NCBI GenBank assembly: GCA_000388065.2
Contig: KB932235.1
Origin: Fonticula alba ATCC 38817
Taxonomy: Eukaryota > Protista > Nucleariida
Reading direction: 5' to 3' (one strand)
Length of the DNA stretch: 8,415 nt
The position numbers and the translations under genes were made by a program. This document shows positions 85 through 8,084 of this stretch, piece after piece (the stretch's first letter is position 1; every line of letters begins with the position of its first letter). A model generated the notes under the pieces. It did not search any database and was not told where the DNA came from. It was given only the letters and a program-made list of their open reading frames with translations.

Positions 85-1763
85 ATCAAGCGCCAAATCC
101 ACAATGACCTGGCCCGGTTGTACACCTTCTCGGCATTGGCGGTCATGACCTCCCAGCGACCGGGCGCCTGTCGCCCGCTGACGGTGTCGAGCTTGGCCCG
201 CACTCCGCAAGACCTCGAGGCCCAGTGGGATTCCTTCGCCGAGGCCGAACTCGGCGGTACCCTGGAAACCGAGGCGTCCCTGCTGCGCTTGGCCTGCCGG
301 TCGCCGGATTCGGCACACATTTGGCCGGTCATCCCGGGCCCGGGGCCCGATGCCCATGGGAATGGCCCCCGGCCGGGGTCGGGCTCCAATGTCCGGTCAT
401 TCCTCCGGCTGCTGCTGACCATTGCCGCCGGGACGAGCGAAGGCATGGGCCTGGACACGGCGCATGCCTTGCGGGCTGAGGCCGCCGCCGCGCCCGATGC
501 CGCGGCCACAACCACCACCACCACCACCACCGGGGCCTTCATCTCGGACCAGGAGCTCGCCGGGCAGAGCCTGCACTTTGAGCAGTTCCTGTCGCAGGTG
601 GTTTTGCAACTGGCGCATCTGGGCGGCAGCGGCACGGCCGGCGATGGGGCCCAGTCTCCAAGCGACCCGGCAGGTGGCTCCGCCTCCCCCCCGGCCGGTG
701 CTGCCAATGGCGGCGGGCCGCCACTGATGATGGACCTCCTATCGCGGCGGCGCTTGCGCTTGGCCTTCTTCCTGCGCTCCGGCCAATGCCCGCTGGACTT
801 GACCCCGCAGCATTTGACCGCCGGTCGGCCTTTCCCCTGGCAGCCGGCCGCCTTCGATGCCGGGGACCTTTGGGATGCCTTCTACCCGATTGCCGGGCGT
901 TTGGCCACCGTGCATGCTCCCGGCCCGGAGGATGCCCTCTGGCAGCGGCTGCTGGCGCTTCATCCGCTTCTGGGACCCGGCGTGCCGGGCCCAAGCCCCG
1001 GCCAAGACCCGGCCAGTGCGGCCTCCTCGCCGGGCCCCCTTCCGACCCATGCGTCCATTTGCTTCCGGTGGGAGCTGGCCCTGTTGGCCATTCAGTCACA
1101 GCAACTGCTGGTCGCATCGCGCATTCTCCTGGCCAGTGCCACATCAGTGCCGCTGAGCGCCTCGCGCCGACGGGACTGCCTGGCCCTGCTGCGCTTCCTG
1201 GCTCTCGCCCGAGGCCCGGCCCCTGGCTCCGGGACCGCGGCGCCGGACGTGGCGACCTCCGCCGCGGCCGCCTCCGCCTCCTCCTCGGCCCTGCAACTGC
1301 CGCTGGCCGTGGCAGTCCCGCACTCGGGGGCCGGCGACACCAGCCAGCTGGTCACCATTTCCAGCTGCTGGATCCTGGCCGTGGTCAATGCCCTGGCACC
1401 GCAGATGGACTCCAAGCCCGGCTCGACCGAGCTCCTGCGCGACCTGTTCCTCCACTCGTCCCTCTCCGGGACATCGCTCTGCCCCTCGACCGCCGGCATC
1501 ATCATCGGCGTCCTGTCACACTATAGCATCCAGTTCATGGGGCCCGGTGAGCCGGAGCCCAACAGCGATGATCCCGACCATGTTGCCAAGGCCGGCCTGA
1601 GCCTGGCCTTCACAAATTACCTCCAGCGCTGCCTGGCCGAGCTGAGCAGCAGCGCACGCAGTGCCCGGCTCACGCGGAACCTGTCGCGCGCCCACCTTCA
1701 GAACTTGTCCCTTCGGCACAAGGCCGAACGGGCCACCCGCGGTGTGGTCATCCATGAGGAAAG
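85..1763 (+). CDS. Penultimate exon of the Vps39-family gene (alpha-solenoid region with low-complexity inserts)
   Basis: Acceptor GCGCCAG (AG 83-84), then open frame IKRQIHND...VIHEE (559 codons + 2 nt), then donor AG|GTGCGC at 1764. The supplied ORF 76..2085 runs on through the intron (poly-Pro artefact). Confidence 0.8.
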
Positions 1764-1768
1764 GTGCG

Positions 1769-1839
<71 letters not shown>

Positions 1840-2392
1840 GCCTGGCATTGGATCATGCGAAGGGGGTGGTCCACCTCCCTCCCCGTATCATGCTCTGCCA
1901 TACCTCCCGTGTTTGATTTCCCTCCGCTCCTCATCTGGTGGCTTCTTTTTTTTTCGCCCTCGCCCTTTGCCCCGAGCCCCGTCCCCCTGTCCGTATGTGC
2001 TGACCTGCCGCTTGGCCGTGGCTCCCGCTCCCCGTGCTCCTGTTGGTGTCTCTCTTTTTTTTTATGGATGTCCCTCTCTCTGTAGCACGTGCTGCCTGTG
2101 CGGCAAGCAACTGATTCAGGAGCCATCCGGCCTGTCAGCCGCCGCCGCCGCCTCGCATGACGCTCATTCCGGGGGCTTCGTGATGATCCCGCTCTTTAGC
2201 ACGGCCAGCGACTACGATTTGGCCGGGGACCTGTCGCCCCGAGATGGCCAGGCCATGGCCGTCTACCTGGCTCAAGGAATGTCCGCCTCGTTTGCGCGTC
2301 CGCCGCCGGCCGGCGTTGAGCGCCTACCGCCTGAGCCCACAGGTGTCGGCACGGCCCATGTCCAGTGTGCCAACCTGGCCGGTCTATTTTGA
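85..2392 (+). CDS. VPS39: 3' portion (5'-truncated by the window) of a Vps39/Vam6/TGFBRAP1(Vps3)-family HOPS/CORVET tethering subunit; join(85..1763,2086..2392), about 661 aa visible
   Basis: Spliced C-terminus FTNYLQRCLAELSSSARSARLTRNLSRAHLQNLSLRHKAERATRGVVIHEE|STCCLCGKQL...SASFARPP...HVQCA matches, by eye and from recall, the Vps39_2 domain (human VPS39 FLEKVLEENAQKKRFNQVLKNLLHAEF...IITEEKVCMVCKKKIGNSAFARYPNGVVVHYFC). Upstream WELALLAIQSQQLLVASRILL resembles the CHCR-region motif ERALLLGRMGKHEQALFIYV. The paralog (VPS39 vs TGFBRAP1/Vps3) cannot be resolved without a phylogeny. Confidence 0.72.
508..531 (+). repeat. ACA(ACC)7 coding repeat, poly-Thr8
   Basis: Read directly; in frame within the Vps39-family exon. 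Confidence 0.9.
1764..2085 (+). other. GT-AG intron (322 nt) of the Vps39-family gene
   Basis: GTGCGC donor, C66 run, CTGAC at 2000-2004, pyrimidine tract, TGTAG acceptor. Removal gives an in-frame protein with the conserved domain. Confidence 0.85.
1769..1834 (+). repeat. C66 homopolymer, starting at intron position +6
   Basis: Read directly. The exact length of such runs is assembly-sensitive. Confidence 0.9.
2086..2392 (+). CDS. Terminal exon of the Vps39-family gene (C-terminal Zn finger), stop TGA 2390-2392
   Basis: Acceptor CTCTCTGTAG at 2085. The phase-2 junction AG+C gives Ser, then TCCLC...HVQCANLAGLF*, restoring the expected CxxC/HxxC domain. Confidence 0.8.
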
Positions 2393-3042: not shown

Positions 3043-4809
3043 TCAGGTCGGCGGCCCAGTGCCCGGGGTGGAGCTGAAATCAAAGAACCCGCCAGCCAGC
3101 GGGGTGTTGGGGCGCATGATCCCCGGGGAGGAAGGATGCGAATAGAAGCCCGGCGTGCCTGGCGGGCCGCCGGTGCTGATGGAGAGGAACCCCCCGGCCT
3201 CCTGCGACCGGAGATCCACGACACTGCTGTCATTCAACTGCAAGTCGGAGGAGAAGTCGATGATCACGGCCGATGAGGAAGACGCGTCGGCCGGTGTGAT
3301 GGTGATCGGCGGAGGGGGCAAGCCGGTGGCCACGGCAAAGGTTTCAGCCGCCGAGGGTGGCCGCGGGCGCTCCGGCTCCTCGTCCCCATCAAACTCGACG
3401 TCCGTGAGAGAGCCATCCTCGCTGTCGCTGAAGTCGAAGGCGGTGGTGGCCCCACGCGTCGGGTCAATGTCGCTGTCATCGTCATCGTCATCGTCATCCT
3501 CGTCGTCATCGTCATCAAAGGATGAGGAGAAGGAATCATGGCCGCGGGCAGGCCCGCCATCGGACTTGCCGCCCTTGGCCCCGAGACCGGCGGCCGACAC
3601 CGAAGCGCCTGACAGGTCCCCGGAGCCGGGGGACGGCAGCGAGCCGGACGGCGAGGCGGCCAGGGCGCCGGTCGCCCCGCCGGCAATCGCCTCATCGGCC
3701 TTGGCAGCGGCACGACGTTGCTGCGACCGCTTGCGCCGACGCTTCCGACGCTTCTTGGACTCGCTCTTCCGCCGGAGAGTTTGGAGCCGGTAGGACTCCC
3801 CGGCGCCCGAACCACCAGGTCCAGCCTGGCCATCCTCCAGCTCCAGCTCATCCTCATTGTCTTCGTAGTCGGCCACCAGCCGCGAATACCGGATGGAGGC
3901 CATGACAATGCCGGCGATGAAAACACCACCAGACACGGCAAACAGGATTTGCGACAGCCACAGACCATCCAGAGCTCCAAGGGTCACGGCACAGAAGAGG
4001 TTCCGCGCGGCCAGGGAGTCCTGGCCAATCCACCGGCATTCGGCCAGGTGCTGCAAGGAAACCCCGGCATCGGTGGCCAGCTGGGTGAAGGTCGTCGCCA
4101 AGACCGGCGCCTGGACCGTGACAAACCCCGGCAGGGTGGTCGCCGCGAAGTGGTCTGCCTGTGCGCGCACGGCGGCCGCCTGCGGCCCGGCCATCCGCGT
4201 GGCATCCAGCAGCCCCGTAAGGCCGACATCCAAGATCTCCGACTGGTCCTCCACCAGGGAGAAGGCCGGCCGAGGATCACTGTTCGGACCAAGGACGTCG
4301 GCTTCGAAGCGCATGGTCAGGGCGTCCGCTCGCTGGAGCAGGCTCTCCAGCTCGATCTGAGCCGCGGCCCCGGCATCCGGGGTGGAGTCGGCCAGAATGA
4401 CACATCGGTCAAAGGTGCCGCTGCCAGGCCCGGCCTGCAGCAATCCCAGGAGGGTCCGCGAAGCGGCCAGTTGATCGCGGAGTCGGTGCACCTGCCCGCG
4501 GTACCGGCCCACCACCGCCTCGCGCCGGGCCAGCGGCGACTGAGAGGTCTCCGTCGACTGAAGAGCATCCAACACCGGGCCGGCGGAAGTCTCCAGCCGG
4601 CTCAGGGCCAGGGTGGTGGCCGACAGGTCGACATACCGCTGGACATCCGGGCCGAAGGTGTCCACCGTTGCCAGGGTGGCGCCAAGGGGCGCGGAGAAAT
4701 CGGCCAGATGCTCCAGGCTCAAGGCCCGCAGGAGGGTCGCATCCCCGGGCTGCCGGCAGGACTCGAATGTGTGCACCAGCTCGGTGAAGGTGTCAGGATT
4801 GATGCCGAC
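3043..4809 (-). CDS. Exon 7: extracellular loop 2, TM5 and cytosolic tail; stop TGA 3045-3043
   Basis: Acceptor CACCAG at 4810; 588 codons open to TGA (part of supplied ORF 3043..5016). Confidence 0.85.
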   Translation of the reverse strand, partial: VGINPDTFTELVHTFESCRQPGDATLLRALSLEHLADFSAPLGATLATVDTFGPDVQRYVDLSATTLALSRLETSAGPVLDALQSTETSQSPLARREAVVGRYRGQVHRLRDQLAASRTLLGLLQAGPGSGTFDRCVILADSTPDAGAAAQIELESLLQRADALTMRFEADVLGPNSDPRPAFSLVEDQSEILDVGLTGLLDATRMAGPQAAAVRAQADHFAATTLPGFVTVQAPVLATTFTQLATDAGVSLQHLAECRWIGQDSLAARNLFCAVTLGALDGLWLSQILFAVSGGVFIAGIVMASIRYSRLVADYEDNEDELELEDGQAGPGGSGAGESYRLQTLRRKSESKKRRKRRRKRSQQRRAAAKADEAIAGGATGALAASPSGSLPSPGSGDLSGASVSAAGLGAKGGKSDGGPARGHDSFSSSFDDDDDEDDDDDDDDSDIDPTRGATTAFDFSDSEDGSLTDVEFDGDEEPERPRPPSAAETFAVATGLPPPPITITPADASSSSAVIIDFSSDLQLNDSSVVDLRSQEAGGFLSISTGGPPGTPGFYSHPSSPGIMRPNTPLAGGFFDFSSTPGTGPPT

Positions 4810-7675
4810 CTGGTGACATTGGCCATTTGGTCCATCGAAGGGGGAGGGAGGGAGAGGGAGAGGGAAAGTCAGGCCAGGGCCCACTGTTGGGGCAGGGGAG
4901 ATAGAGCGAGCCGAGGACAGGCAACCATGGGAGAGATGGAGGGCAGGAGGGGGGGGGGGGGACATGACGTACGACATCGCTGAAAATGGGGGAGATCTCG
5001 CCCGAGTCGACAACATCGCACGCCTCAGACGCGCCGAGGGCCAGGACGAAATGCAGCCCGAAGGCGGCCCAGGTGAAAGCCGCGAAGATGAAGGACAGAA
5101 TAACTGCCACCTTGGATGCCAGGGTGAAGCGCAGGGAGATCGTCGCCAGGACCAGGAGGATCAACACACAGGGAACAATGAAGACAGCAAGGACAATGCT
5201 CGATCTGGGACGGGAAGGAGGCGCATGGCCCCAGAGCCGGAGGGAGGGGGCGGGATGGGGTGGGGGATTGGGAGAGGGGGGACGGCGTAAGGAAAACATC
5301 CGGCATGTTAGAGAGGGAGGAAGGAGACAAGGGCAAGTTGCATATGAAAAAGGAGGGACATCGAAAAATATGCACGTGTGTGTGTATGTGAAAAAGCAAA
5401 CAACAGCGCGCACCTGTATGGCTCATACGGATCGATGTACGTGTCCTTGGCCTGCATAAGGAGGTCGGTGGTGGAATGGATTGTGTTCGCTGTCGGAAGG
5501 GCCGCATTCAGGTGGAAGGTCTGATAGGACCCGGCCATTTCCTCCTGCATGCTGGTGACGCTGTCTCGGACGACTGCCCGAGGAGGAAGAAGAGGGCGAG
5601 GGGGGGGGGGGGGGGGAGAGACAGAGCGGCGAAACATGCGCCCGAATCCTGTCAGACACAGAGCAGAACCGGGCCAGGCAGCCCGGGGGAAAGGGGGAAG
5701 AGGCGGGAAGGGGCAAGAGAGCGAGGCAGGGCAGCATAAGACGACATACGGTCACCGTAAGATTGAATGCGGCCGGCGAAATCCCCGAGATTGCTGTCTA
5801 TCGCGGAGGTCAAATCACTCGAGGCCTCCTCGATGTTGTTGTTGCCAATGGCATCAATCAGGATATCCTCGATTTCGTCGGACCCCGCGAAAACAGCCTC
5901 CTCGGTGGAGAGTGCCGTGCCGGAGACCCCGAGCAAGTCGCAGGCGGCATCTCCGCCACGCAGAGCCCATGGGCGCCCGGGCCCGGGAGCCCGATAGGCA
6001 TCAACCAGAGCAGCGTTCAAACGCTGAACATCGTCCAGCTGGGCCGCATCATCGAGGAACCGATTGAAGACATCCTGAAAGTCGTTGGCGGCGTTGTCCT
6101 GCGTGGGAAAGAGAAAGAGAGAGAGAGAAATAAAGAAGGAGATGGGGGAGGGAGGAGACAGGGAAGGGGTGCGATTGGTTCCCCGGTGAGAATGCATGTA
6201 AGTAGACTGTGAAGGGGACAGGGAGAAGAGAACGAGCAGGGGGGCGTGCGTGTGTGTGTGTGTGTGTGTGTGTGTTTGGGAGGGGGGGGAAGGGGACAGG
6301 ACGAGAAAACGCACGAAGTTGGCGGCCTGATCGATGACCTGGTCAGCTTGGGCATCGAAGTTGGCCGTTGCGGCGGCCACCTCGCGCGATTGGATCCACA
6401 GAAGACCCTCCTGCCCGGCAAACGTCTCGATCGGGTCATAGGCCACGGTGAAGGCGCTGCTGGCCAGCTGGCCGAAGCTGATCGGAGTATGCTCGACCGT
6501 TGCATTGAGCACTGGCAGGTAGGCATCCAGATGGTCATACACACCGGCCGACAGGTGCAGCGAGGAGCCCATGGCCTCGGCAGTGAAGGTGTTGGAGGCG
6601 ATGCCGAGCCCCGCAAAGACCGCGATCAGACCGGACCCAATGGCCAGGATGACTAGCGAGAAGATCCGGTCCGACCGGGAGTAGGGCTTCTGCGCGCGGT
6701 CGGCTCCGCCGCAGCAGGCCAACGACCGACAGGGGAAGAAGACAATGGCCAGGATCAGGAAGAAGAGCGCCAGCAGCGCGGCGATGGAGAGAATAATCAG
6801 GAGGACCTGACAACGGGGAAGCCGCCGAAGGGTGGGAGAGAACCGTGAGTGGGAGAGGCAGAAGCAGAGCGAAGCAAAGAGAAGCAGAGGGGGGGAAAGC
6901 CAAAGGGGAGGGGTGGGGGGGGGGCGGGGAGCGAAAACAGAACGGAGAGGAGAAAGTCCAGCCAGCATCATGGACCAGTGTGCGAGATGTCTGCATACGC
7001 ACGACGTTGTCTGCGGCAAACTCGCCAATTGTGAAGAGAGGTGCTCCGGGATCCTGGCTGCTGTCGGCCGTGGGGGCGGCGGCGGCGGCGGCGGCGGACA
7101 CCGGGAAAAGCGGCTCATAATAAGATGGCACAACGAAGGTGTTGTCCGGGATGCGCAAGCGCGTGGGTGACCGGAGGATGGCCGCCAGCCAGACCCATGG
7201 CCGAAGGCCGGCCGACAGGGACGTTCGATCACCAAGGGCCAAGATTGACTCGTCATAGTCGGACGTGGGAACCAGCGGTGCCTTCAGGAAGGGGCTATCG
7301 GAGGAGTCCCCACGGCCGATGCCGGTGGCTGGAAACCGCGGAGAAACGAGACACAGGAGGCAAGGCAAGCGGCGTGCGCGCGTGCGTGCGAGAAGTGCGA
7401 GAGGTGCGAAGAGGGGAGGAGGGAGGAACGGCACGCGGGGGGGGGTTGGGGGGGAGGGTGCGCAGTCAGTGGCATGGGAAGGGAGATGCGCTCCGGGGAG
7501 GATCAAGGATGACTGGCTGGCAGTCGGGCAAAACGGCAGCAGCACAACGGAGAGGCGTACAGGAGGCAAATGCCGAGCCGACCATCAGCAAAAGAGCCAG
7601 CATGGAGAAGAGCAGGAGCAGTAGACGGCGCCCGGCCCGGGCGGCGCTTCGCCCGGGGTCCGGAGGGAAATGCAT
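3043..7675 (-). CDS. Prominin/Tweety(TTYH)-superfamily pentaspan membrane protein, 1146 aa; complement(join(3043..4809,4973..5204,5414..5573,5750..6098,6315..6806,7003..7328,7561..7675))
   Basis: Seven exons (115+326+492+349+160+232+1767 = 3441 nt) join with matching phases 1,0,0,1,2,0 and no internal stop. Layout: signal peptide aa 1-37, TM1 148-172, then CRSLACCGG, TM2 195-217, loop of about 264 aa, YEPYR then TM3 482-505, TM4 513-538 then SEAC, loop of about 300 aa, ECR-x13-C...LDGLW, TM5 about 842-864, tail of about 280 aa. The family call is by motif recall, not a database search. Confidence 0.75.
3475..3516 (-). repeat. (GAT GAC)n-type coding repeat encoding a 14-residue Asp/Glu tract
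   Basis: Read directly in the exon 7 frame. Confidence 0.85.
4949..4961 (-). repeat. C13 run (sense strand) in intron 6, 11 nt after the donor G
   Basis: G13 on the + strand. Confidence 0.85.
4973..5204 (-). CDS. Exon 6: TM3, TM4 and post-TM4 SEAC
   Basis: Acceptor TCCCAG at 5205, donor GTC|GTACGT at 4972; intron 6 = 4810-4972 (163 nt). Confidence 0.85.
5414..5573 (-). CDS. Exon 5: end of extracellular loop 1 (...YIDPYEPYR)
   Basis: Acceptor GGGCAG at 5574, donor AG|GTGCGC at 5413; intron 5 = 5205-5413 (209 nt). Confidence 0.8.
5600..5616 (-). repeat. C17 run (sense strand) in intron 4
   Basis: G17 on the + strand. Confidence 0.85.
5750..6098 (-). CDS. Exon 4: extracellular loop 1 (helical, acidic; Cys364)
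   Basis: Acceptor ACGCAG at 6099, donor C|GTATGT at 5749; intron 4 = 5574-5749 (176 nt). Confidence 0.85.
6250..6275 (-). repeat. (AC)13 microsatellite in intron 3
   Basis: (GT)13 on the + strand. Confidence 0.9.
6315..6806 (-). CDS. Exon 3: TM1, Cys cluster, TM2, start of extracellular loop 1 (contains the NAT sequon)
   Basis: Acceptor TGTCAG at 6807, donor TTC|GTGCGT at 6314; intron 3 = 6099-6314 (216 nt). Confidence 0.85.
7003..7328 (-). CDS. Exon 2: N-terminal ectodomain (TGIGRGDSS...EFAADNV)
   Basis: Acceptor TTTCCAG at 7329, donor GTC|GTGCGT at 7002; intron 2 = 6807-7002 (196 nt). Confidence 0.75.
7075..7095 (-). repeat. (GCC)7 coding repeat, poly-Ala7 in exon 2
   Basis: Read directly. 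Confidence 0.9.
7561..7675 (-). CDS. Exon 1: signal peptide MHFPPDPGRSAARAGRRLLLLLFSMLALLLMVGSAFA|S
   Basis: ATG 7675-7673 in GCCATG context; basic n-region, Leu-rich h-region, A-F-A cleavage motif. Donor T|GTACGC at 7560; intron 1 = 7329-7560 (232 nt). Confidence 0.7.

Positions 7676-8048: not shown

Positions 8049-8084
<36 letters not shown>

What the first reader, a model, noticed from the sequence alone, without database searches (positions are those of the whole stretch)
3043..7675. Prominin/Tweety mosaic pentaspan protein in an apparently non-animal microbial eukaryote
Seen: a phase-consistent 7-exon gene giving signal peptide + 5 TM. Prominin-like traits: cleavable signal peptide, N-terminal ectodomain of about 110 aa, CRxxxCCGG after TM1 (cf. 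PROM1 CRCCNKCGG), two long loops (about 264 and 300 aa), and LDGLW before TM5 (cf. LNLFW). Tweety-like traits: YEPYR before TM3 (cf. EYYRW), SEAC after TM4 (cf. SDFC), and ECRWIGQDSLAARNLFC (cf. DCRxLHKDYLDALAGIC). Known: prominins organise cholesterol-rich membrane protrusions and extracellular vesicles; TTYHs are dimeric lipid-associated membrane proteins; the two families are reported to be homologous. Inference: this could belong to a deep-branching lineage bridging the families, and could act in protrusion, vesicle or lipid biology in a protist.
Basis: partly seen in the sequence, partly recalled or inferred. Interest (0 to 1): 0.75.

Follow-up and report, generated by a model that had tools for sequence, protein, structure and literature searches.

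The report
Divergent prominin-like membrane protein in Fonticula
The window holds a real seven-exon gene for a membrane protein that crosses the membrane five times and is laid out like animal prominin (CD133), but its kinship to prominin and Tweety rests on weak, concordant hints, and prominin-like genes outside animals are already reported.

Summary
Observation confirmed. A minus-strand gene (7675..3043) has seven exons, six GT..CAG introns and consistent phases, and gives 1146 aa.

Interpretation partly supported. No piece reaches significance against Prominin or Tweety.
- Pfam: Prominin at best 12 bits (cut-off 34.3), Tweety 8.6 bits (cut-off 31.8).
- PDB: TTYH3 and TTYH1 at E 1.6-2.5.

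The weak signals are co-linear, and independent pieces point to the same two families, as do protein-language-model neighbours. Long loops, a Cys-rich TM1 junction and a Trp at the start of TM5 put it on the prominin side. That Trp is reported near-invariant in prominins and absent in TTYH. A "mosaic" or "bridge" status cannot be shown at these scores.

Putative prominins in fungi, excavates, SAR and plants were already reported (Bell et al. 2024). The protein is very isolated: an HMMER search of 1.84 billion representatives with the loop-2/TM5 piece found one relative.

Limits:
- The joined protein was never searched or folded.
- The AlphaFold model of one piece was unusable.

Earlier scan notes name the genome as Fonticula alba; they record no prominin or Tweety finding.

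The parts
3043..7675 (-). Whole gene, ATG to stop: 7 exons, 6 introns, 1146 codons
7561..7675 (-). Exon 1: start codon and signal-peptide-like leader (basic n-region, Leu-rich core, AFAS end), aa 1-38
7003..7328 (-). Exon 2: N-terminal outer segment, aa 39-147, with an RGD tripeptide at 7306-7314 and an Ala run
6315..6806 (-). Exon 3: TM1 (6735-6806), Cys-rich junction C173/C178/C179 (6711-6731), TM2 (6597-6665), start of outer loop 1 with the only loop sequon, N248
   Evidence: Pfam Prominin top hit E 0.05-0.09; Atlas Tweety and Prominin neighbours
5750..6098 (-). Exon 4: middle of outer loop 1, with its single Cys (C364)
5414..5573 (-). Exon 5: end of outer loop 1, ending in YEPY(R) before TM3
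4973..5204 (-). Exon 6: TM3 (5138-5203), short inner loop, TM4 (5030-5113), GASEAC (C543) just outside the membrane
   Evidence: Pfam Tweety E 0.89 at 210-266/431; PDB TTYH3/TTYH1 at 218-280, E 1.6-2.5
3964..4809 (-). Exon 7, first part: outer loop 2 (predicted all-helical) with C576, C694, C816 and C831. The most conserved block, ECRWIGQD..AARN..C....LDGLW, lies at 3958-4038
   Evidence: Alignment with the only relative, P0001/L001; secondary structure from the low-confidence model
3889..3963 (-). TM5 (aa 841-865), with Trp842 as its second residue
   Evidence: Trp-795 of prominins in PMC11405016
3046..3888 (-). Cytoplasmic tail of 281 aa: low complexity, net charge -25, acidic stretch, polybasic run (KKRRKRRRKR), poly-Asp run encoded by (GTCATC)7 at 3475-3516, Ser/Gly/Pro-rich end

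Best explanation
The locus encodes a plasma-membrane protein with five membrane spans. It is a very divergent member of the prominin/TTYH superfamily and lies on the prominin side.

Shown here:
- an intact 7-exon gene;
- a leader peptide followed by a 2+2+1 arrangement of spans;
- a 109-aa outer N-terminus;
- a 23-aa inner loop that begins with three cysteines;
- two long, predicted-helical outer loops (264 and 301 aa) carrying six cysteines;
- a second inner loop of about 8 aa;
- a Trp at the outer end of TM5;
- a 281-aa disordered, charged tail.

Inferred by analogy with PROM1 and TTYH1 (Bell et al. 2024; Sukalskaia et al. 2021):
- The long loops fold back as a helical stalk above the membrane.
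- Disulfides pin a membrane-proximal flap. Likely pairs are C543 or C576 with C816 or C831.
- The protein binds sterol or another lipid at the outer leaflet near Trp842, sorts to curved membrane such as the amoeba's filopodia, and promotes protrusion or vesicle release.
- The long charged tail is a lineage-specific addition that could dock to acidic lipids or the cytoskeleton.
For: - Gene model and coding periodicity.
- Topology and loop sizes match the operational definition of a prominin used by Bell et al.: five helices in 2+2+1, two large outer loops, two small inner loops.
- Cys-rich TM1/inner-loop junction, a documented prominin feature (PMC3108902).
- Prominin is the top Pfam hit of the TM1-TM2 piece, at the co-linear profile position, in three cuts.
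- The TM3-TM4 exon hits Pfam Tweety and the PDB chains TTYH3 and TTYH1 at co-linear positions, including the G-x-S-x-x-C just after TM4.
- Language-model neighbours: for exon 3, the 12 of 30 clusters that carry a family are 7 Tweety and 5 Prominin. For the loop-2/TM5 piece, 5 are Prominin and 1 is Tweety.
- Trp842 and four loop-2 cysteines are invariant in the only relative found. A Trp in TM5 is reported as the most conserved prominin residue and as absent from TTYH.
Against: - No hit passes a curated or conventional threshold. The best Prominin score is 12.1 bits against a cut-off of 34.3; the best Tweety score is 8.6 against 31.8.
- The longest and best-conserved piece (loop 2 plus TM5) has no Pfam or PDB hit to either family at E up to 10.
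- phmmer of that piece against 1.84 billion representatives found no annotated prominin or TTYH.
- The Atlas recognition values (1439 and 1521) are in the range where the tool calls high scores weak evidence.
- Hydrophobic hairpins also matched ND4L at the same score level.
- The AlphaFold model was unusable (pLDDT 37.7), so no fold comparison exists.
- The loops carry only one N-glycosylation sequon; this is compared with the multi-glycosylated animal prominins from my own knowledge.
- Equating Trp842 with Trp-795 rests on position, not on an alignment.
Confidence: 0.6

Rival explanations
1. It is a third, deep-branching lineage of the superfamily, or a TTYH-side member with enlarged loops, rather than a prominin.
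For: The weak hits split by region: TM1-TM2 goes to Prominin and TM3-TM4 to Tweety/TTYH. Atlas neighbours of exon 3 are more often Tweety than Prominin. The protein has no detectable kin among annotated members of either family. The Cys pattern around loop 2 resembles the disulfide-pinned E3-E4 flap described for TTYH.
Against: Scores of 9-13 bits cannot rank two homologous families. Only TTYH, not prominin, appeared among the solved-structure hits, so TTYH hits there had no prominin chain to compete with. Loop lengths, the long outer N-terminus after a leader peptide, the Cys-rich junction and the TM5 Trp are prominin traits, and that Trp is reported absent in TTYH. Both families are said to predate opisthokonts, so a bridge form in a relative of fungi is not expected.
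Confidence: 0.15
2. It is a lineage-specific membrane protein unrelated to either family, whose five-span layout and helical loops are convergent.
For: No significant sequence match to any family. Only one relative, an unannotated fragment, in 1.84 billion representatives. Hits to hydrophobic hairpins are prone to compositional artefacts (ND4L).
Against: Three independent pieces and three methods (profile HMM, pairwise HMM against the PDB, language-model features) all point to the same two homologous families out of about 25,000, each at the co-linear position. The full set of prominin layout features is present.
Confidence: 0.2
3. The gene model is wrong in part, or the locus is a pseudogene, so the five-span protein is not made as drawn.
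For: No transcript evidence could be obtained. Intron 3 is 216 nt with no in-frame stop, so its removal is not forced by the frame. The protein was not found in the searched protein collections.
Against: All exons show coding periodicity. All introns share size, pyrimidine bias and GT..CAG ends. The frame of exon 7 is confirmed by conservation with P0001. There are no frame breaks.
Confidence: 0.05

Closest known systems
Prominin family (PROM1/CD133, PROM2; Pfam PF05478), including the putative non-animal prominins curated by Bell et al. 2024 (PMC11405016)
   Same: Leader peptide and outer N-terminus of about 100 aa. Five spans in a 2+2+1 pattern. A short, Cys-rich first inner loop. Two outer loops of about 260-300 aa. 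A Trp at the outer end of TM5. Cysteines placed to tie the loops. Weak co-linear Pfam hit over TM1-TM2.
   Different: Below the Pfam threshold. Loop 2 and TM5 are not recognised by the profile. One loop sequon only. A cytoplasmic tail of 281 aa with polybasic and poly-Asp runs, against about 50 aa in PROM1 (the PROM1 figure is from my own knowledge). No detectable pairwise similarity to any annotated prominin.
Tweety homologues TTYH1-3 (Pfam PF04906; cryo-EM 7P5J, 7P5C, 7RTW)
   Same: Five spans, N-terminus out and C-terminus in. Helical extracellular domain. G-x-S-x-x-C just after TM4, with further Cys before TM5. Disordered cytoplasmic tail. Weak co-linear hits over TM3-TM4.
   Different: TTYH loops are about 120 aa against 264 and 301 here. 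TTYH is reported to lack a residue analogous to the TM5 Trp. The Cys-rich TM1 junction is documented for prominins; its absence from TTYH is my own knowledge and was not checked here. Scores are far below threshold.
P0001 / L001 (309-aa ORF on a 1270-nt Logan contig of run SRR548319, organism unknown)
   Same: 29% identity over loop 2 and TM5. Four cysteines, the C-x-W-x-GQD-x-x-AARN-x-x-C block and LDG-x-W are conserved.
   Different: It is a fragment. Its tail after TM5 is only about 25 aa. It has no annotation and no Pfam hit.

Membership tests
Prominin (PF05478; criteria of Bell et al. 2024) | Five transmembrane helices in a 2+2+1 pattern, N-terminus outside | tested here: met
   Hydropathy of each exon: leader plus spans at 148-171, 195-217, 482-503, 512-539 and 841-865. 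Orientation is inferred from the leader peptide.
Prominin (PF05478; criteria of Bell et al. 2024) | Two large extracellular loops (about 280 aa or more) and two small intracellular loops (under 25 aa) | tested here: met
   Outer loops of 264 and 301 aa; inner loops of about 23 and 8 aa. The 264-aa loop is a little under the >300 aa written in the paper's methods.
Prominin (PF05478; criteria of Bell et al. 2024) | Sequence homology to annotated metazoan prominins (Pfam gathering score 34.3 bits) | tested here: inconclusive
   Scanned exon by exon only. The best score is 12.1 bits, E 0.05, at profile 91-194/799, and other exons give nothing. The joined protein was not scanned.
Prominin (PF05478; criteria of Bell et al. 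2024) | Cysteine-rich region at the TM1 / first inner loop junction | tested here: met
   C173, C178 and C179 in PCRSLACCGG. The feature is described in PMC3108902, with 4-8 Cys in Xenopus prominins.
Prominin (PF05478; criteria of Bell et al. 2024) | Near-invariant Trp in TM5 towards the outer leaflet (human Trp-795) | tested here: inconclusive
   Trp842 is the second residue of TM5 and is invariant in the only relative. Its equivalence to Trp-795 rests on position only, because no prominin sequence was available to align.
Prominin (PF05478; criteria of Bell et al. 2024) | Fold: TM bundle plus long extracellular helical stalk | tested here: inconclusive
   AlphaFold2 of loop 2 plus TM5 with a 2-row alignment gave pLDDT 37.7. 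It is all-helical but unusable, and no fold search was run.
TTYH / Tweety (PF04906) | Sequence match to the Tweety profile (gathering score 31.8 bits) or to solved TTYH chains | tested here: inconclusive
   Exon 6: 8.6 bits, E 0.89, at profile 210-266/431. TTYH3 and TTYH1 at E 1.6-2.5, residues 218-280. Other pieces give nothing.
TTYH / Tweety (PF04906) | Compact extracellular domain (loops of about 120 aa) | tested here: not met
   Loops of 264 and 301 aa, against about 120 aa in TTYH (PMC11405016).
TTYH / Tweety (PF04906) | Conserved disulfides pinning the E3-E4 flap after TM4 | not testable with these tools
   The Cys pattern is compatible (C543, C576 ... C816, C831; PMC8361169), but pairing needs a reliable model or experiment.

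The most novel reading that the evidence does not exclude
The Fonticula protein and its single relative could represent a previously unrecognised third branch of the prominin/TTYH superfamily. Such a branch would keep prominin's long loops and TM5 Trp together with TTYH-like membrane-proximal features. It would give a handle on the ancestral form and on the lipid and membrane-curvature function of the fold in an amoeba with filopodia.
Probability: 0.15. Interest if true: 0.6.

Novelty: new member of a known kind. Interest (0 to 1): 0.35.

Why it matters
If the assignment holds, the closest unicellular relatives of fungi keep a prominin-type protein. The host, Fonticula, is an amoeba that makes filopodia and aggregates into fruiting bodies. 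It would be a simple system for asking what the fold did before animals used it in microvilli, cilia and photoreceptor discs: sterol or lipid binding, curvature sorting or vesicle release.

The gain is modest. Prominin-like genes outside animals are already on record, and the homology shown here is only suggestive.

Tried and rejected
- **Word-index protein searches.** Exon 7, P0001 and exon 3 found nothing beyond P0001 itself.
- **HMMER search of 1.84 billion representatives** with the loop-2/TM5 piece. It gave one true relative (P0001) and one repeat-protein artefact (P0002, 8 short stretches), which I rejected.
- **Metagenome scan** with the 2-row alignment: 202 pattern matches, none confirmed.
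- **PDB sequence searches.** Exon 3, loop 2, the A1 profile, exon 4 and the TM5 block gave no family hit. Hits to a designed repeat protein, SMC1 and a LysR regulator were rejected as chance.
- **Pfam on sub-pieces** of loop 2/TM5 and on P0001: nothing. NCBIfam: nothing relevant.
- **AlphaFold2** of the loop-2/TM5 piece: pLDDT 37.7. I therefore ran no Foldseek or VIA search, and I ran no further search on another shallow piece.
- **Literature.** I found no source for the 'prominin signature' motif that I recalled, so I do not use it as evidence. No paper links prominin and Fonticula. The search for the run id of L001 hit an unrelated paper.
- **RNA genes.** Rfam and tRNA scans of the window were empty.

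Full report
**What is in the sequence.**
The window is GC-rich eukaryotic DNA (58-75% GC). On the minus strand between 7675 and 3043, unique junction strings define seven exons: 7675-7561, 7328-7003, 6806-6315, 6098-5750, 5573-5414, 5204-4973 and 4809-3043. The six introns are 163-232 nt long. Each starts with GT (GTGCGT twice, GTACGT, GTACGC, GTGCGC, GTATGT) and ends with CAG. Phases are consistent and the CDS is 3441 nt, or 1146 codons.

Every exon shows the coding pattern GC3 (0.69-0.82) > GC1 > GC2. The introns are 72-76% pyrimidine on the coding strand, against 51-64% for the exons.

**Protein layout.**

| Element | Residues |
|---|---|
| Leader with a basic start and Leu-rich core | 1-38 |
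| Outer N-terminal segment, 109 aa | 39-147 |
| TM1 | 148-171 |
| Inner loop of about 23 aa, opening with C173, C178, C179 (PCRSLACCGG) | 172-194 |
| TM2 | about 195-217 |
| Outer loop 1, 264 aa, one Cys, one sequon (N248) | 218-481 |
| TM3 | 482-503 |
| Inner loop 2 | about 8 aa |
| TM4 | about 512-539 |
| Outer loop 2, 301 aa, with C543, C576, C694, C816, C831 | 540-840 |
| TM5, with Trp842 as second residue | 841-865 |
| Tail, 281 aa, net charge -25, with acidic, polybasic and poly-Asp runs | 866-1146 |

**Constraint on method.**
I did not build, search or fold the joined protein. One natural open frame (window:5751-6806:-) runs through exon 3, the in-frame intron 3 and exon 4, and I used it as such.

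**Family scans.**
Against Pfam, exon 3 (TM1-loop-TM2) has Prominin as its top hit:
- E 0.087, 11.3 bits, profile 94-194 of 799;
- E 0.051, 12.1 bits with a slightly longer cut;
- E 0.45 with the read-through piece.

Exon 6 (TM3-TM4) lists Tweety at E 0.89, profile 210-266 of 431, fifth of seven weak hits. Both positions are co-linear with where those helices sit in the profiles. Both scores are far below the gathering scores of 34.3 and 31.8 bits.

Exon 7 and its sub-pieces hit neither family. NCBIfam gave nothing relevant.

**Solved structures, by sequence.**
Exon 6 gave eight hits at E under 10. Four are TTYH3 (7P5C, 7RTW, 9QNR) or TTYH1 (7P5J), at residues 218-280. That region is TM3-TM4 plus the G-S-S-D-F-C just outside TM4, aligned with G-A-S-E-A-C here (E 1.6-2.5). 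The other four hits are ND4L, which shows that hydrophobic hairpins reach this score by chance.

Exon 3, exon 4, loop 2, the TM5 block and a two-row profile gave no family hit.

**Language-model neighbours.**
- For exon 3, the 12 of 30 nearest Atlas clusters that carry a Pfam family are 7 Tweety and 5 Prominin (scores 0.91-0.92).
- For loop 2 plus TM5, five are Prominin (0.93) and one is Tweety (0.89).
- Recognition values (1521 and 1439) are in the range where the tool itself calls such scores weak evidence.

**Relatives.**
A full HMMER pass of loop 2 plus TM5 over 1.84 billion representatives gave only two hits at E up to 0.001.
- One (P0002) is a repeat artefact.
- The other, P0001, is a 309-aa ORF on a 1270-nt Logan contig of run SRR548319 (L001). 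It shares 29% identity, with pairwise E 1e-14.

The alignment (A1) conserves four loop-2 cysteines, the block [E/G]C[R/Y]W[I/V]GQD-x-x-AARN-x-x-C, and LDG[L/V]W at the start of TM5. This confirms the reading frame of exon 7 and marks the membrane-proximal end of loop 2 as the constrained part.

P0001 has a tail of only about 25 aa after TM5, no Pfam hit and no further kin. Word-index searches and a metagenome scan added nothing. The Fonticula protein itself was not found in the protein collections.

**Structure.**
AlphaFold2 on A1 gave mean pLDDT 37.7. The model is all-helical but unusable, so I ran no fold search. Fold-level homology is therefore untested.

**Literature.**
- Hori et al. 2019 linked PROM1 to TTYH by HHpred (PMC6828804).
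- Bell et al. 2024 (PMC11405016) defined a prominin operationally: five helices in 2+2+1, two large outer loops, two small inner loops, and homology to metazoan prominins. They found putative prominins in fungi, excavates, SAR and green plants. They report Trp-795 in TM5 as nearly invariant in prominins, with no analogue in TTYH, and give TTYH loops as about 120 aa against about 280 aa in prominin.
- A Cys-rich TM1/inner-loop junction is a recognised prominin trait (PMC3108902).
- TTYH structures show five helices, a helical extracellular domain, a lipid-filled cavity and an E3-E4 flap pinned by conserved disulfides (PMC8361169).

**Reading.**
Taken singly, no match is significant. Taken together:
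- two independent pieces (TM1-TM2 and TM3-TM4) each pick, at the co-linear place, one of two families already known to be homologous to each other;
- the language-model neighbours of two pieces pick the same pair;
- the layout fulfils every architectural criterion for a prominin.

I put about 0.75 on membership of the prominin/TTYH superfamily. Within that, about 0.6 goes to the prominin side, because of the loop lengths, the leader plus long outer N-terminus, the Cys-rich junction and the TM5 Trp.

The 'mosaic' reading is not supported. The regional split of weak hits is within noise. Only TTYH, not prominin, appeared among the solved-structure hits. The block said to resemble TTYH gave no TTYH hit. 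It is not excluded either (about 0.15). An unrelated, convergent five-span protein remains possible (about 0.2).

**Mechanism.**
This part is inferred, not shown. By analogy with PROM1 and TTYH1, the two loops would form a helical stalk. Disulfides between C543/C576 and C816/C831 would pin a membrane-proximal flap over a lipid-facing surface next to Trp842. The protein would bind sterol or another lipid in the outer leaflet, partition into curved membrane (filopodia in this amoeba), and favour protrusion or vesicle shedding. The 281-aa charged tail, absent from the relative P0001, is a lineage-specific addition. It is partly built from a (GTCATC)7 repeat.

**Host.**
Earlier notes of this scan name the genome as Fonticula alba. 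I did not test this. Those notes contain no prominin or Tweety finding in this genome.

**Verdict.**
I file it as a probable new, very divergent member of a known kind. The decisive tests remain undone: a profile search and fold of the joined protein, a phylogeny, and RNA-seq.

Noticed in passing
window 1769-1834 and 8049-8082: Perfect homopolymer runs of 66 C and 34 C. The first lies in an apparent intron of the neighbouring plus-strand gene; the second lies about 375 nt upstream of the prominin-like gene's start codon.
   Followed up: no
window 85-1764 and 2096-2392 (+): A convergent neighbour gene on the plus strand. It has a long open exon ending at a GTGCGC donor near 1765, then a pyrimidine-rich intron and a last exon ending at 2392. 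Neither piece has any Pfam hit. It lies tail to tail with the prominin-like gene, across about 650 nt rich in (CA)n and (GA)n.
   Followed up: partly
window 6099-6314 (-): Intron 3 is 216 nt, a multiple of three, with no stop in any frame. If retained, it would insert 72 low-complexity residues (from a (GT)15 microsatellite and more) into outer loop 1 without breaking the frame.
   Followed up: no
window 3475-3516 (-): The (GTCATC)7 tandem repeat encodes the poly-Asp run of the cytoplasmic tail. It is likely to vary in length between strains.
   Followed up: no
window 7306-7314 (-): An RGD tripeptide lies five residues into the mature outer N-terminus. It may be chance.
   Followed up: no
L001 1-130: The frame of the relative stays open to the contig's first base. 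It reads ..QISPEFGD.., which resembles EISPIFSD at the end of exon 6 here (5 of 8 identical, E 0.5). If this is real, the homology runs across the exon 6/7 junction, and the contig is a truncated transcript or a gene with a different intron position. The organism of run SRR548319 is unknown.
   Followed up: partly
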